This document shows, one piece after another, positions 19,348 to 24,149 of a stretch of DNA of 64,000 nt (position 1 is its first letter; every line of letters starts with the position of its first letter). The DNA comes from Macrostomum lignano (taxonomy: Eukaryota): contig NIVC01000440.1 in the NCBI GenBank assembly GCA_002269645.1, forward strand, positions 62,001 to 126,000, in the 5' to 3' direction. The position numbers were made by a program, and so were the translations under genes. Below the pieces are notes generated by a model. It saw only the letters and a list, made by a program, of their open reading frames with translations. It ran no database searches and was not told where the DNA came from.

Positions 19348-22300
19348 ATGCAGGCACCCAGGTGCCTGTTTCGAATCTGTTTTGAGCCTTTGCTGAAGCA
19401 GCCCGACAGTCCGAAGTATCTGCATCAATATGTGCTCAGTCTGAGACACCTGTTAGAATGTAACGATGAGTTGGGTTTTTCAACTCGAGCCCAATGGTTG
19501 GAATACTTGCAGTCGGCTCTGTTGGCCGCTTGTCGTCTGTTTGCGCTGTGCTCAAGGACTGCAGCCCAGTCAGCTTGGCCGCACATTTCCAAGTCTCATT
19601 TGAGCAAGATTCGTCGAGCAGTGATAGAAGGATTAACTCAACTGAATAGGGTGTTGCGCAATCCTAGTCCGGAGCTGGTGGCCGCCTGGAAACTGCTGTC
19701 TTCTGCTGGGGAATCCGTTAATGTGAGACTTTCTGTCTGTCACTCTTCGCTGGCACTGTTTGTCATGTCTCACACTATTTTCGCTTGCTATCATTTGGCA
19801 CTCTAGTATCTGTCACTCCTTGTCATTTAGCACTCTATCTGTCACTCCTTGTCATTTAGCACTGTCACTCCTTGTCATTTAGCACTCTATCTGTCACTCC
19901 TTGTCATTTAGCACTCTATCTGTCACTCCTTGTCATTTAGCACTCTATCTGTCACTCCTTGTCATTTAGCACTCTATCTGTCACTCCTCATTTAGTACTC
20001 TATCTGTCACTCCTCATTTAGTACTCTATCTGTCACTCCTCATTTAGTACTCTATCTGTCACTCCTCATTTAGTACTCTATCTGTCACTCCTCATTTAGT
20101 ACTCTATCTGTCACTACTTGTCATTTAGCACTCTATCTGTCACTACTTGTCATTTAGCACTCGTGACAGATACCAGAGTGCTAGATGACAGGGGAGTGAC
20201 AGATACAAGAGAGAGATAGATGACAGGGGAGTGACAGATATCAGAGTGCTAGATGACAGGGAGTTACAGATACAAGAGAGTGATAGATGACAAGGGAGTG
20301 ACAGATTTGAGAGATTGATAGATGACAGGGGAGTTGCAATCTGTCACTACTTGTCATCTAGCACTCTCTTGTATCTGTCACTCCCCTGTCATCTAGCACT
20401 CTCTTGTATCTGTCACTCCCTGTCATCTAGCACTCTCTTGTATCTGTCACTCCCTGTCATCTTGCACTGTCTTGTATCTGTCACTCCCTGTCATCTTGCA
20501 CTCTCTTGTATCTGTCACTCCCTGTCATCTATCACTCTCTCAAATATGTCACTCCCTGTCGTCTAGCGTCTGTCACTCGCCAATCCCTAATGTTCGGTCA
20601 CTCCTTTAAATGACGTCACCTGAACAGACGCAATTTATTAGCAACCTGAATTTCCACCTCAGCTCGGCGAGCTGGACAACCAGCTGACAGCCTGGTTCAA
20701 CAGGATCGGCTCCAGCGGGCTGGCTCTGCTCAGCGCACAGACAGCCCGGGCCGGAGCACTGGACTCGACGCCAGACTTGGAGAAGCGTCAGCTCTGTCAG
20801 GCCCGTCAGCTGTTCGAACACCTGGGCGTCAGGAACCTGCAGGAAGCGTCAGCGTCTCTAGGCAACGGCATGGAGCAGTTTCTGCGCTGTCTGTCGGCTG
20901 GAACTGAAGCCGGCGATACAGACTGCGAGCTGTTTCGCAACTGCGCTAATAAGCTGCAATCGGGCTTGCGAACTGCGCTTGACGAACTGGAGGCGACGGC
21001 TTTGAAGGCCATTGTTGCTGCTTCATCTGCTGCTGCATCTCCAACTGAACCTGCTGCGGTAATTGATCGCTCTTTATACTTTACTTCCATACATATCGAG
21101 TGATAGGCATAGCTCTACCCTGCCATCGAAGGTTATGTTTATTTCGATACATATCGGGTAATAGGCATAGCTCTACCCTCCCATCGAAGCTTATATTTAC
21201 TTCGATACATATCGAGTGATAGGCATAGCTCTATCCTCCCATCGAAGCTTATATTTACTTCGAGACATATCGGGTAATAGCTCCTCCCTGCCATCAAAGG
21301 TTTTATTTACTTCGATACATATCGGGTAATAACTCTACCCTGCCATCGAAGGTTTTATTTACTTCGATACATATCAGGTAATAGCTCCTCCCTGCCATCA
21401 AAGGTTTTATTTACTTCGATACATATCGGGTAATAGCTCTACCCTGCCATCAAAGGTTTTATTTACTTCGATACATATCGGGTAATAGCTCTACCCTCCC
21501 ATCGAAGCTTATATTTACTTCGATACATATCGGGTAATAGCTCCTCCCTGCCATCAAAGGTTTTATTTACTTCGATACATATCGGGTAATAGCTCCTCCC
21601 TGCCATCAAAGGTTTTATTTACTTCGATACATATCGGGTAATAGCTCTACCCTGCCATCGAAGGTTTTATTTACTTCGATACATATCGGGTAATAGCTCT
21701 CCCCTACCATAGAAGGTTATATTTGCTTTGATACATATCGGGTAATAACTCTACAGCGCCATCAAAGGTTTTATTTACTTTACGTTTATATCAATTGGCT
21801 GTTAAATGTCGGATCGATACATATCGCCAAATAATACATTACTATGATTTTTTAACTAAATGCACTACTTACTCCTTAATCAAGGCGCCTGAGCAGCCTG
21901 CTGTTGTTGCGGCTCCTCTGCCCACGGCAGCTGCCACCAAGCGCAGCGTCCATCCGGCGGCCTCTCGTAGCTGCCAGCAGCCGCAAAAAGCGGCAGCCAC
22001 GAGCGAAGAATGCGGTGGCAGCGGCGGCAGCGGCGTTGTTTATCGACGCCTGCTGCGCTGCAGCATGAACACTCCTGCCGTCAGCGAGTCGTTAATGGAC
22101 ATTGGAGTCGATGCTACCAGCACCCCCTCGCCTAGGAAGCAGCCGATGCTGCGACAGAATGCTGCTGTGAGCACTGTTTATCTATACTGTCTGTCTGTCT
22201 GTCTGTCTGTCTGTCTGTCTGTCTGTCTGTCTGTCTGTCTGTCTGTCTGTCTGTCTGTCTGTCTGTCTGTCTGTCTGTTTATCTGCCTGTCTGTCTGTCT

Positions 22301-24149
22301 GTCTGTCTGTCTGTCTGTCTGTCTGTCTGTCTGTCTGTCTGTCTGTCTGTCTGTCTGTCTTTCTGTCTGTCTGTTTATCTATACTGTCTGTCTGTCTGTC
22401 TTTCTGTTTATCTTTCTGTTTATCTATACTGTCTGTCTGTCTGTCTTTCTGTTTATCTACTGTCTGTCTGTCTGTCTGTTTGTCTCTTCTTTCTGTCTGT
22501 CTGTCTGTCTGTCTGTCTGTTTATCTATACTGTCTGTCTGTCTGTCTGTCTGTCTGTCTTTCTGTCTGTCTGTCTGTTTATCTATACTGTCTGTCTGTCT
22601 GTCTGTCTGTCTCTCTGTCTTTCTGTCTGTCTGTCTGTCTGTCTGTCTGTCTGTCTCTCTGTCTGTCTGTCTGTCTGTCTGTCTGTCTGTCTGTCTGTCT
22701 GTCTGTCTGTCTGTCTGTCTGTCTGTCTGTCTTTTTGTCTGTCTGTCTGTCTGTCTGTCTGACTGTCTGTCTGTCTTTCTGTCTGTCTGTCTGTCTGTCT
22801 GTCTGTCTGTCTGTCTGTCTGTCTGTCTGTCTTTCTGTCTGTCTGTCTGTTTATCTATACTGTCTGTCTGTCTGTCTGTCTGTCTCTCTGTCTTTCTGTC
22901 TGTCTGTCTGTCTGTCTGTCTGTCTGTCTCTCTGTCTGTCTGTCTGTCTGTCTGTCTTTCTGTCTGTCTGTCTGTCTGTCTGTCTGTCTGTCTGTCTGTC
23001 TTTTTGTCTGTCTGTCTGTCTGTCTGTCTGACTGTCTGTCTGTCTTTCTGTCTGTCTGTCTGTCTGTCTGTCTGTCTGTCTGTCTGTCTGTCTGTCTGTC
23101 TGTCTGTCTGTCTTTCTGTCTGTCTGTCTGTTTATCTATACTGTCTGTCTGTCTGTCTGTCTGTCTGTCTGTCTGTCTGTCTGTCTGTCTGTCTGTCTGT
23201 CTGTCTGTCTGTCTTTCTGTCTGTCTGTCTGTTTTTCTATACTGTCTGTCTGTCTGTCTGTTTATCTATACTGTCTGTCTGTCTGTCTGTCTGTCTGTCT
23301 GTCTGTCTGTCTGTCTGTCTGTCTGTTTTTCTATACTGTCTGTCTGTCTGTCTGTTTATCTATACTGTCTGTCTGTCTGTCTGTCTGTCTGTCCGTCTGT
23401 CTGTCTGTTTATCTGCCTGTCTGTCTGTCTGTCTCTTTTTACCTGCCTCTGTCTGTGTCTGTCTGCCTGATGCCCAAATGTCACACTGGTTGCTAATCTC
23501 ATTGCAGCCCGAGCAGCAGCAGCAGCAGCCGCAGGAAACTGCAATTAACAGCAATTCACCCGTAGTTGTTATTGACAACAGTGCCAATGACAGAAATAGC
23601 AGCAAGAAGAAAGCCAATAGCACCAATCGTAGCAACTCAGACAAGCCAGCAGGTTCAGGTAACAACAACAACAGCAGCAGCAGCAGCAGCAGCATCAGCT
23701 CGGATGGCATCAGCTCAGATCCCGACGATGTCCAGGTTGTCCAGAGCTCGCCAAATGCCTCGTCAGCGGCGGCCGCCAGACCCGGCGCCAGCCGTCGCCC
23801 AGTCCTGGACCTGTCGCAGGAGATGCGCGGCCGATTCACCAGCTCCGCCTCCTCAGTCAGACAGCGCCGGCCTTGGAACGAGCGCGACTCGTTTCTGCTA
23901 TACATCGGGCACGCGCGCTACGGATCTGACTGGGTGAACATTCGCAACCGGCTGCTGAGCCACGCCGCTCGCACCAATGTCCAGATTAAAGATCGCTGGC
24001 GCAATATGCTGAATCGCAACATCCCAGGCAGAATCAGCCGCCGCCTGCGGCAATTGGGATTTAGCGATGAGGACATCCGAGCTGTTGAAATTGAGGACCT
24101 GATGGAGCAGCTGCGTTCCGACTTGGATTTGCGCTCCATCTTTCTGTGA
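19348..24149 (+). CDS. Helical N-terminal region + low-complexity linker + C-terminal telobox-type Myb domain (TRF/Tbf1-like), ~564 aa
   Basis: Phase-0 exons 19348-19722, 20663-21058, 21885-22166, 23508-24149, all GT-AG. C-terminal RRPWNERDSFLLYIGHARYGSDWVNI...RTNVQIKDRWRNM. The 5' end is uncertain: ATGCAG at 19348 could itself be an acceptor. Confidence 0.7.
19805..20580. repeat. 29/35-bp intronic minisatellite with an inverted central block
   Basis: Forward units TATCTGTCACTCCTTGTCATTTAGCACTC to ~20160, reverse-complement units ~20164-20337, forward units again from ~20339. Confidence 0.9.
21065..21785. repeat. 52-bp intronic minisatellite
   Basis: TTTATTTACTTCGATACATATCGGGTAATAGCTCTACCCTGCCATCAAAGGT; period 52 from 21301 to 21353. 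Confidence 0.95.
22185..23465. repeat. (TCTG)n intronic microsatellite, ~1.3 kb
   Basis: Directly visible; makes ORF 21795-24149 appear continuous. Confidence 0.97.

What the first reader, a model, noticed from the sequence alone, without database searches (positions are those of the whole stretch)
19348..24149. Candidate TRF/shelterin-like telomere protein: helical N-terminal region plus telobox Myb domain
Seen: a single C-terminal Myb domain (~23862-24012) ending RTNVQIKDRWRNM, a long Ser/Asn/Gln linker, and ~250 aa of predicted amphipathic helices at the N-terminus. Known: RTxVxLKDRWR marks telobox Myb domains of TRF1/TRF2, Tbf1 and plant TRB/TRFL, and TRF1/2 have an all-helical TRFH dimerisation domain in this position. 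Inference: a divergent double-stranded telomere-binding protein of a lineage where such factors are hard to find by BLAST.
Basis: partly seen in the sequence, partly recalled or inferred. Interest (0 to 1): 0.7.

Follow-up and report, generated by a model that had tools for sequence, protein, structure and literature searches.

The report
Flatworm gene with TRF-type Myb domain
This is a real, transcribed four-exon gene of the flatworm Macrostomum lignano whose protein ends in a DNA-binding Myb domain of the kind that human TRF1/TRF2 use to grip telomere repeats, so it is a reasonable candidate for the undescribed flatworm telomere-binding protein, but its front half shows no detectable relation to the TRFH domain that defines the TRF family.

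Summary
Window 19348-24149 (+) is a four-exon gene of Macrostomum lignano. It is a duplicate of GenBank BOX15_Mlig017644g1 ("hypothetical protein"), whose annotation rests on RNA-seq. The 564-aa protein has four parts: a ~257-aa helical N-terminal region, a ~210-aa Ser/Ala/Pro/Gln/Asn-rich hinge, one Myb domain (aa 471-519) and a 45-aa helical tail.

The Myb recognition helix RTNVQIKDRWRNM carries the K-D-R-W-R signature of TRF1/TRF2. Among solved structures, its best single-domain sequence and fold matches are telomeric Mybs (zebrafish TRF2, 39-40% identity). The TERB1 Myb is far more distant (18%).

- Pfam finds nothing in the N-terminus.
- A TRFH HMM built here scores -0.7 bits, and hhalign gives 0.8% probability.
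- The AlphaFold model is too poor (pLDDT 51) to test the fold.
- An exhaustive search of 1.84 billion representative proteins finds no relative of the N-terminus outside its own cluster.

Both the N-terminus and the Myb region are under purifying selection (dN/dS about 0.04, from few substitutions).

Verdict: a telobox/TRF-class Myb protein with an orphan helical N-terminal domain. It is a plausible but unproven double-strand TTAGGG binder, and it is not shown to be a TRF family member.

The parts
19348..19722 (+). Exon 1 (aa 1-125), first half of the helical N-terminal region. It starts at the ATG and ends at a GTGAGA donor.
   Evidence: It is 99.2% identical to the L001 exon, and the L001 model equals P0001.
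19723..20662 (+). Intron 1. It holds a 29-bp tandem array (19807-20162), then inverted copies of related units, then direct copies again.
   Evidence: Minus-orientation BLAST hits appear.
20663..21058 (+). Exon 2 (aa 126-257), second half of the helical N-terminal region. An alternative in-frame acceptor at 20642 would add 7 aa (QPEFPPQ).
   Evidence: (P0001 uses the 20663-type acceptor).
21059..21884 (+). Intron 2, with a 52-bp tandem array at 21109-21780.
21885..22166 (+). Exon 3 (aa 258-351), the Ala/Pro/Ser-rich first part of the hinge. It includes one non-repetitive island, GVVYRRLLRCSMNTPAVSESLMDIGVDATSTPSPRK (22032-22139).
22167..23507 (+). Intron 3. It is almost entirely a (CTGT)n microsatellite (22187-23434, ~310 copies), which gives the false SVCL-repeat ORF.
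23508..23864 (+). Exon 4, first part (aa 352-470): the Gln/Asn/Ser-rich second part of the hinge.
23865..24011 (+). Single Myb domain (aa 471-519). The recognition-helix motif RTNVQIKDRWRNM lies at 23970-24008 (aa 506-518). K512-D513-R514-W515-R516 corresponds to hTRF1 K421-R425 (numbering from my own knowledge).
   Evidence: Pfam, PDB phmmer, alignment A2, AF2 pLDDT 84-95, Foldseek.
24009..24149 (+). C-terminal tail (aa 519-564) plus the TGA stop. A predicted extra helix follows the Myb directly (IPGRISRRLRQ, 24021-24053, block-mean pLDDT 80-89), with further less confident helices after it.
   Evidence: Pfam finds no family.

Best explanation
The locus is a functional, transcribed Macrostomum lignano gene, one of at least two about 97% identical duplicate copies. 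It encodes a 564-aa nuclear DNA-binding protein.

Its only recognisable module is one TRF/telobox-class Myb domain near the C-terminus. The most likely mechanism is as follows. Helix 3 (IKDRWR) reads the major groove of double-stranded TTAGGG repeats, as in TRF1/TRF2, helped by the basic arm RQRRP just before the domain. A single Myb binds weakly on its own, so the conserved helical N-terminal ~257 aa would supply self-association or partner binding. The low-complexity hinge would act as a flexible tether carrying short docking motifs.

This would make the protein the functional counterpart of the single TRF2-like TRF of other invertebrates. Its N-terminal domain is then either a TRFH diverged beyond recognition or an unrelated replacement.

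Shown: the gene structure, purifying selection, and the Myb class. Inferred: TTAGGG binding, oligomerisation, and a telomeric role.
For: Gene reality:
- The exon model reproduces GenBank P0001 exactly on the duplicate locus.
- That annotation derives from a genome-guided RNA-seq transcriptome (PMC5730564).
- Exons are 97-99% identical between the copies, against about 85-93% for introns and upstream flank.
- dN/dS is 0.11 overall, 0.04 in the N-terminus (8 synonymous, 1 non-synonymous), and 0.04 in the Myb plus tail.

Myb class:
- Pfam Myb hits are above their gathering cut-offs.
- Fifteen columns are invariant with vertebrate TRF2 Mybs, including R-T-x-V-x-I-K-D-R-W-R-x-M.
- This meets the K-D-R/K-W/Y-R criterion of Myler et al. 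2021 (PMC8653790).
- The best single-domain PDB hit is the zebrafish TRF2 Myb at 27.6 bits.
- For the recognition helix alone, 15 of 21 PDB matches are TRF1/TRF2/Terfa, and the c-Myb rows have no stretch that passes on its own.
- Foldseek ranks 1-7 are all telomeric Mybs, with TM 0.84-0.86, rmsd 1.2-1.3 A and 39-40% identity to zebrafish TRF2.

Context:
- M. lignano chromosome ends hybridise with (TTAGGG)n (PMC5068713).
- No double-strand telomere binder is described for flatworms in the open literature searched. [quoted passage not shown]
- The overall layout (a helical N-terminal domain of ~250 aa, a long hinge, a C-terminal Myb, ~560 aa) parallels the TRF2-like invertebrate TRFs described.
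Against: - There is no detectable TRFH.
- The N-terminal fold is unknown: pLDDT 50.7 and only non-significant Foldseek hits.
- By whole-domain score the Myb is only marginally closer to TRF2-type than to c-Myb R3. Terfa scores 27.7, c-Myb R3 23.1-24.4, hTRF2 23.0 and hTRF1 18 bits. My TRF2-specific HMM (25.0 bits) does no better than the generic Pfam Myb model (25.2 bits).
- The Foldseek ranking is partly biased, because the model's alignment consisted of TRF2 Mybs.
- There is no iDDR-like acidic/Trp patch. The 60 aa before the first Trp of the Myb core (W474) hold 6 acidic and 8 basic residues and no Trp.
- The Myb is followed by a 45-aa tail instead of ending the protein.
- No relatives of the N-terminus were found outside its own 50% cluster, so conservation across flatworms is unknown.
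- I could not search the M. lignano genome for a canonical TRFH-Myb gene that would take the TRF role.
- Telobox Myb proteins can be mainly non-telomeric. Zebrafish Terfa acts genome-wide (PMC8887477 abstract).
Confidence: 0.5

Rival explanations
1. A non-telomeric, sequence-specific Myb regulator. The protein would use its telobox-like Myb to bind interstitial TTAGGG-like or other short motifs in promoters or chromatin, or to dock on another protein. The N-terminal domain would be a lineage-specific regulatory or interaction module, with no role at chromosome ends.
For: - Whole-domain similarity to c-Myb R3 (23-24 bits) is nearly as high as to human TRF2 (23 bits).
- There is no TRFH.
- There is no iDDR-like patch.
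- The N-terminus is an orphan among 1.84 billion representatives.
- Zebrafish Terfa shows that TRF-type proteins can act away from telomeres (abstract of PMC8887477).
- From my own knowledge, yeast Tbf1 and plant TRB proteins bind telobox motifs in promoters.
Against: - The recognition helix carries the full K-D-R-W-R signature plus RT-V upstream and M downstream, identical to TRF2.
- The best helix-3 matches among solved structures are TRF proteins.
- The host has TTAGGG telomeres and no described double-strand binder.
Confidence: 0.3
2. A true orthologue of the single invertebrate TRF whose TRFH dimerisation domain has diverged beyond sequence recognition in the fast-evolving flatworm lineage. 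This is the first reader's full interpretation and a narrower form of the best explanation.
For: - The domain order and sizes match: a ~250-aa helical N-terminal domain with 8-9 helices, a long hinge, and a TRF-type Myb.
- TRFH is poorly conserved even among other invertebrates, at about 36% identity to vertebrates.
- The N-terminus is under strong constraint between the duplicate copies.
Against: Every TRFH test that could be run was negative or uninformative:
- No hit to Pfam PF08558.
- No PDB TRFH hit at E<=10.
- HMM score of -0.7 bits.
- hhalign probability of 0.84%, with the only alignment placing TRFH columns 30-80 at aa 167-219. That position would push the rest of a TRFH into the disordered hinge.
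- No TRFH among the 50 Foldseek matches listed for the (poor) model.
Confidence: 0.25
3. A TERB1-like meiotic telomere adaptor: an N-terminal helical repeat domain plus a C-terminal Myb that tethers telomeres to the nuclear envelope.
For: TERB1 has a helical (ARM-repeat) N-terminus and a C-terminal Myb, and it is ancestral in metazoans, including Lophotrochozoa (PMC7227075).
Against: - No ARM or any other Pfam family is found in the N-terminus at E<=10.
- The TERB1 Myb structure 1x58 (identity confirmed) is only Foldseek rank 27, with 18% identity. It was not found by phmmer at E<=10, whereas the TRF1/2 Mybs were.
- The protein is about 200 aa shorter than mouse TERB1, whose Myb lies at aa 715-747.
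Confidence: 0.04
4. A gene-model artefact: the N-terminal exons and the Myb exon belong to different transcripts, so the apparent architecture would be an accident of open frames between repeat arrays.
For: The introns are repeat arrays that themselves stay open in some frames, for example the 784-aa SVCL ORF. The exons could therefore be over-interpreted from sequence alone.
Against: - The junctions are all GT-AG and phase 0.
- The identical model is in GenBank, derived from RNA-seq.
- Exons are conserved more than introns between the copies, and dN/dS is low in each exon block.
Confidence: 0.03

Closest known systems
Metazoan TRF proteins (vertebrate TRF1/TRF2, zebrafish Terfa, the single TRF2-like TRF of cnidarians, molluscs, echinoderms and cephalochordates)
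   Same: - The Myb domain lies near the C-terminus and carries the K-D-R-W-R recognition helix. RT-V-IKDRWR-M is identical to TRF2.
- There is a basic arm before the domain.
- The H2-H3 loop is of TRF-like length.
- A long hinge links an N-terminal helical region of about 250 aa to the Myb.
- Total length is similar to TRF2.
- The host has TTAGGG telomeres.
   Different: - No TRFH is detectable by Pfam, by a custom HMM, by hhalign or by PDB search.
- There is no iDDR-like acidic/Trp patch.
- A 45-aa helical tail follows the Myb.
- The Myb has YGSDW instead of YGEGNW and is only 26-34% identical to vertebrate TRF2 Mybs.
Plant TRFL/TBP proteins (NgTRF1, RTBP1, AtTRP1) with a Myb plus a C-terminal Myb-extension helix
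   Same: These also have a single telobox Myb near the C-terminus followed by an additional helix. A confident helix 4 is predicted directly after the Myb here. NgTRF1 structures are Foldseek ranks 6, 11 and 15.
   Different: The Foldseek alignments to NgTRF1 cover only 50-52 columns, which is the three-helix core, so the extra helix is not shown to be equivalent. Identity is 25-28%. The plant proteins have a different N-terminal architecture (my own knowledge).
TERB1 (meiotic telomere adaptor)
   Same: A helical N-terminal region plus a C-terminal Myb.
   Different: No ARM repeats are found. The TERB1 Myb (1x58) is only 18% identical and ranks 27.
c-Myb/R2R3 Myb repeat 3
   Same: Whole-domain phmmer score is comparable to that for hTRF2 (23-24 bits). 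The YG-x-x-W spacing of helix 2 resembles R3.
   Different: There is a single repeat rather than two or three. Helix 3 is IKDRWRNM rather than IKNHWNSTM (alignments). The H2-H3 loop is longer.

Membership tests
TRF1/TRF2 family (definition of Myler et al. 2021, PMC8653790: TRFH plus a C-terminal TRF-like Myb) | TRF1/2-like Myb domain with the K-D-R/K-W/Y-R motif in helix 3 | tested here: met
   K512-D513-R514-W515-R516. R-T-x-V-x-I-K-D-R-W-R-x-M is invariant with 9 vertebrate TRF2 Mybs. The best single-domain PDB hit is the zebrafish TRF2 Myb. The helix-3 query hits mainly TRF1/2. Foldseek ranks 1-7 are telomeric Mybs.
TRF1/TRF2 family | TRFH domain recognisable by sequence (Pfam PF08558) | tested here: not met
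   No PF08558 hit on the full protein at E<=1 or on the N-terminus at E<=10. No TRFH chain in PDB phmmer at E<=10. TRFH HMM from 17 non-redundant TRF2 sequences scores -0.7 bits. hhalign probability is 0.84%.
TRF1/TRF2 family | TRFH fold (all-helical dimerisation domain) at the structural level | tested here: inconclusive
   The single-sequence AF2 model is all-helical, but with pLDDT 50.7 and pTM 0.39. Foldseek against PDB gives no match at E<=0.001 and no TRFH among the 50 matches listed. A low-confidence model cannot decide this.
TRF1/TRF2 family | Myb at the extreme C-terminus | tested here: not met
   The Myb ends at aa 519, and 45 more residues follow, forming predicted helices.
TRF1/TRF2 family | Homodimerisation and binding to ds TTAGGG repeats at telomeres | not testable with these tools
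   This needs biochemistry and localisation. The only supporting context is that the host has TTAGGG telomeres.
TRF2-like invertebrate TRF | iDDR-like acidic cluster around a Trp, with low local pI, within ~60 aa upstream of the Myb | tested here: not met
   The 60 aa upstream hold 6 D/E, 8 K/R and no Trp. Mollusc TRFs also lack this feature, so it is not exclusionary.
Telobox Myb proteins (Bilaud et al. 1996 consensus, recalled from my own knowledge) | Helix-3 consensus V-x-[LIV]-K-D-[KR]-W-R-x-[LM] preceded by R-[ST] | tested here: met
   The sequence RTNVQIKDRWRNM lies at aa 506-518.
TERB1 | N-terminal ARM-repeat domain | tested here: not met
   Pfam finds 0 families in aa 1-257 at E<=10.
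TERB1 | TERB1-type Myb domain | tested here: not met
   1x58 (the TERB1 Myb) is Foldseek rank 27 with 18% identity. It is absent from the phmmer hits at E<=10.
R2R3 / c-Myb type transcription factors | Two or three tandem Myb repeats | tested here: not met
   Pfam finds one Myb stretch only. The sequence upstream is low-complexity hinge.
Plant TRFL/TBP (Myb-extension) proteins | A fourth helix packing on the Myb core and required for DNA binding | tested here: inconclusive
   A helix is predicted at aa 523-533 with block-mean pLDDT 80-89. The Foldseek alignments to NgTRF1 stop at the three-helix core, at 50-52 columns.

The most novel reading that the evidence does not exclude
Macrostomum, and perhaps flatworms generally, cap their TTAGGG telomeres with a double-strand binder that kept the ancestral TRF Myb but replaced the TRFH with an unrelated, lineage-specific helical oligomerisation domain. 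That would be a new architecture for a metazoan shelterin core subunit. It would explain why BLAST finds no TRF in flatworms. It would also imply rewired recruitment of partners such as RAP1, TIN2 and Apollo.
Probability: 0.2. Interest if true: 0.65.

Novelty: new variant of a known kind. Interest (0 to 1): 0.45.

Why it matters
Flatworms are leading models for stem-cell-driven regeneration and apparent somatic immortality, and they have vertebrate-type TTAGGG telomeres and telomerase. In the open literature I searched, only a POT1-like OB-fold protein has been described as a flatworm telomere protein. The authors of that study state that no other shelterin components could be predicted by BLAST (PMC5032016). 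The survey of metazoan shelterin does not mention flatworms (PMC8653790).

M. lignano has transgenesis (PMC5730564) and, from my own knowledge, RNAi. A concrete candidate for its double-strand telomere binder would therefore make flatworm telomere protection directly testable. If the N-terminal domain proves not to be a TRFH, it would also show that the dimerisation module of TRF proteins can be replaced during animal evolution.

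Tried and rejected
- Full-length database search. It returned only the GenBank duplicate, because low-complexity words filled the 8000-candidate limit.
- Database search with the Myb plus tail alone. It returned nothing, not even P0001, so it is uninformative. With 5.8 billion sequences, a single Myb of about 25 bits cannot reach significance.
- Exhaustive phmmer of the N-terminus. The only foreign hit, P0002 (E = 8.6e-8), is a TPR-repeat protein. Re-alignment shows one 40-aa segment matching eight repeats at -2 to +3 bits each. I rejected it as an artefact of summing repeats.
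This was useful for building the TRFH and Myb profiles, but it says nothing about whether flatworms have a canonical TRF.
- Foldseek on the low-confidence N-terminal model. It gave only designed helical bundles and unrelated proteins at E>0.2, so it is not interpretable.
- Weak hhalign/HMMER alignment of aa 167-219 to TRFH columns 30-80. It is not significant and is positionally implausible.
- Look-up of the window's own spliced protein in the contig index.
- Literature searches for the locus tag and for flatworm TRF or shelterin. No relevant description was found.
- Search for TTAGGG arrays in the window. None were found, so the locus is not subtelomeric by that test.

Full report
**What is there**

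[quoted passage not shown] A four-exon model assembled from the sequence is 97% identical over its full length to GenBank protein BOX15_Mlig017644g1 (P0001, 567 aa, "hypothetical protein"). The exons are 19348-19722, 20663-21058, 21885-22166 and 23508-24149, with GT-AG, phase-0 introns.

P0001 is encoded on contig NIVC01000906.1 of assembly GCA_002269645.1 (locus L001). Applying my exon boundaries to L001 reproduces P0001 exactly. The GenBank annotation of that assembly was derived from a genome-guided RNA-seq transcriptome (PMC5730564). The splicing of the N-terminal exons to the Myb exon therefore has transcript support.

The window and L001 are collinear duplicates. This fits the known large-scale duplication in this species.
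- Exons are 97-99% identical.
- Introns and the upstream flank are about 85-93% identical.
- dN/dS is 0.11 overall.
- dN/dS is 0.04 for aa 1-257 (8 synonymous, 1 non-synonymous change).
- dN/dS is 0.31 for the hinge.
- dN/dS is 0.04 for the Myb plus tail.

The counts are small, but both structured ends look constrained.

All three introns consist largely of tandem arrays: 29-bp, 52-bp and (CTGT)n. The 784-aa "SVCL" ORF is read-through of the CTGT array. It is not protein.

**The protein**

The window copy is 564 aa long.
- **aa 1-257:** Leu/Ala-rich and predicted as 8-9 helices, at low confidence (pLDDT 50.7). Amphipathicity is modest but consistently positive.
- **aa 258-470:** a hinge that is 55% Ser/Asn/Gln/Ala/Pro. 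It contains one non-repetitive island at aa 307-342.
- **aa 471-519:** a single Myb domain. Pfam PF00249 scores 25.2 bits against a cut-off of 24.4, and PF13921 scores 25.4 against 22.9.
- **aa 519-564:** a tail predicted to start with a fairly confident extra helix at aa 523-533.

**Which kind of Myb**

Aligned with nine vertebrate TRF2 Myb domains, 15 columns are invariant. They include the whole recognition-helix signature R-T-x-V-x-I-K-D-R-W-R-x-M. This meets the K-D-R/K-W/Y-R criterion that Myler et al. use for TRF1/2-like Mybs.

Evidence from all PDB sequences:
- The best single-domain match is the zebrafish TRF2 (Terfa) Myb at 27.6 bits.
- Human TRF2 (23 bits), TRF1 (18 bits) and tobacco TBP1 (15 bits) also appear.
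- c-Myb R3 scores 23-24 bits, so whole-domain similarity discriminates only weakly.
- With the recognition helix alone, 15 of 21 PDB matches are TRF1/TRF2/Terfa. The c-Myb rows have no stretch that passes on its own.

An AF2 model of the Myb plus tail has pLDDT 84-95 across the Myb. It superposes on zebrafish TRF2 Myb-DNA complexes at 1.2-1.3 A with TM 0.84-0.86 and 39-40% identity. Foldseek ranks 1-7 are all telomeric Mybs. The TERB1 Myb (1x58, identity confirmed) is rank 27 at 18% identity. One caveat applies: the model's alignment was made of TRF2 Mybs, so the ranking leans that way.

My TRF2-specific Myb HMM scores 25.0 bits. That is no better than the generic Pfam model. The class assignment therefore rests mainly on the recognition helix and loop length, not on overall score.

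**The N-terminal region is not demonstrably a TRFH**
- Pfam finds no family in aa 1-257 even at E<=10, and no PF08558 hit on the whole protein.
- phmmer against all PDB sequences at E<=10 returns one irrelevant hit and no TRF1, TRF2, TIN2 or Taz1 chain.
- A TRFH HMM built from 17 non-redundant TRF2 sequences scores -0.7 bits.
- hhalign gives 0.84% probability.
- The AF2 single-sequence model is too poor for a fold comparison. Foldseek returns nothing at E<=0.001 and no TRFH among the 50 matches listed.
- An exhaustive HMMER pass over 1.84 billion representative proteins finds only the protein's own cluster and one artefactual TPR-repeat hit.

The N-terminal domain is therefore an orphan at the sequence level. 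Either it is a TRFH diverged beyond recognition, or it is something else. TRFH is only about 36% identical between invertebrates and vertebrates.

**How it most likely works**

M. lignano telomeres hybridise with (TTAGGG)n at all chromosome ends. Among the solved animal Myb structures compared here, the KDRWR-type recognition helix is found in the telomeric TRF proteins.

The most probable reading (about 0.5) is a double-strand TTAGGG-binding protein. Helix 3 would read the repeat. The constrained helical N-terminus would provide self-association or partner docking. The hinge would act as a flexible tether. All of these steps are inferred.

The main rival (about 0.3) is a non-telomeric Myb regulator. 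A TERB1-like adaptor (0.04) and a gene-model artefact (0.03) are disfavoured. The narrower claim that this is a TRF orthologue with a cryptic TRFH gets about 0.25.

**Comparison with the known, and novelty**

The protein works most like the single TRF2-like TRF of invertebrates. It fails the family's defining TRFH test at the sequence level, lacks an iDDR-like patch, and has a post-Myb tail. I therefore do not file it as a TRF family member. I file it as a telobox/TRF-class Myb protein with a novel N-terminal domain, which is a new variant of a known kind.

The gene is already in GenBank as an uncharacterised protein. I found no paper describing it or any flatworm TRF. The planarian POT1 study states that no other telomere proteins could be predicted by BLAST.

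**Limits**

I could not search flatworm genomes for a canonical TRF or for orthologues of this gene. DNA binding, dimerisation and localisation are untested.

Noticed in passing
window 25213-29523 (- strand ORFs); TRF array 25320-29523: Very long minus-strand 'ORFs' (925-1399 aa, GDSFGRILGCPEILSGGFWDVRRFF repeats) are read-through of a 32-bp tandem array of about 133 copies, with a 222-bp higher-order period. They are not a gene. The array is 4.2 kb here but only about 1.7 kb in the duplicate locus (L001 15928-17598).
   Followed up: partly
window 18704-19206: A 24-bp G-rich tandem array (TTGGGGCACCAGCTACAGAGGGGG, ~21 copies) ends about 140 bp upstream of the gene's ATG. It stays open in several frames, giving false ORFs. 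It is about 1.3 kb long in L001 (8548-9861). Any effect on the promoter is unknown.
   Followed up: no
window 19807-20566 (intron 1): The 29-bp intronic repeat occurs as direct copies, then as reverse-complement copies (about 20163-20330), then as direct copies again. The pre-mRNA or DNA could therefore form a long hairpin. BLAST against L001 shows minus-orientation matches here.
   Followed up: no
window 20642 vs 20663: Two in-frame AG acceptors lie 21 nt apart at the start of exon 2. GenBank uses the downstream one. The upstream one would add QPEFPPQ, a possible alternative isoform.
   Followed up: no
window 17401-18437 and 29525-36712: Neighbouring genes inferred from collinearity with annotated L001: a DUF4604 protein upstream, then Snf7/CHMP, a WD40-repeat protein and a Yip1-family protein downstream. 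The downstream flank is 96-99% identical between the duplicates, and the upstream flank is 84-93% identical.
   Followed up: partly
window-wide (e.g. 5784-6207, 31873-32560, 34674-35602, 36883-37947, 44069-44904, 48664-49292, 50660-51141, 63198-63647): At least 17 separate large tandem arrays (periods of 4-95 bp) occur in 64 kb. This is consistent with the published figure that simple and tandem repeats make up 15% of the M. lignano genome.
   Followed up: no
protein aa 307-342 (window 22032-22139): The only non-low-complexity island within the hinge is GVVYRRLLRCSMNTPAVSESLMDIGVDATSTPSPRK. Apart from an adjacent indel at its first residues, it is identical between the two gene copies. It could be a short partner-docking motif, by analogy with the Rap1- and TIN2-binding motifs in the TRF2 hinge.
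   Followed up: no
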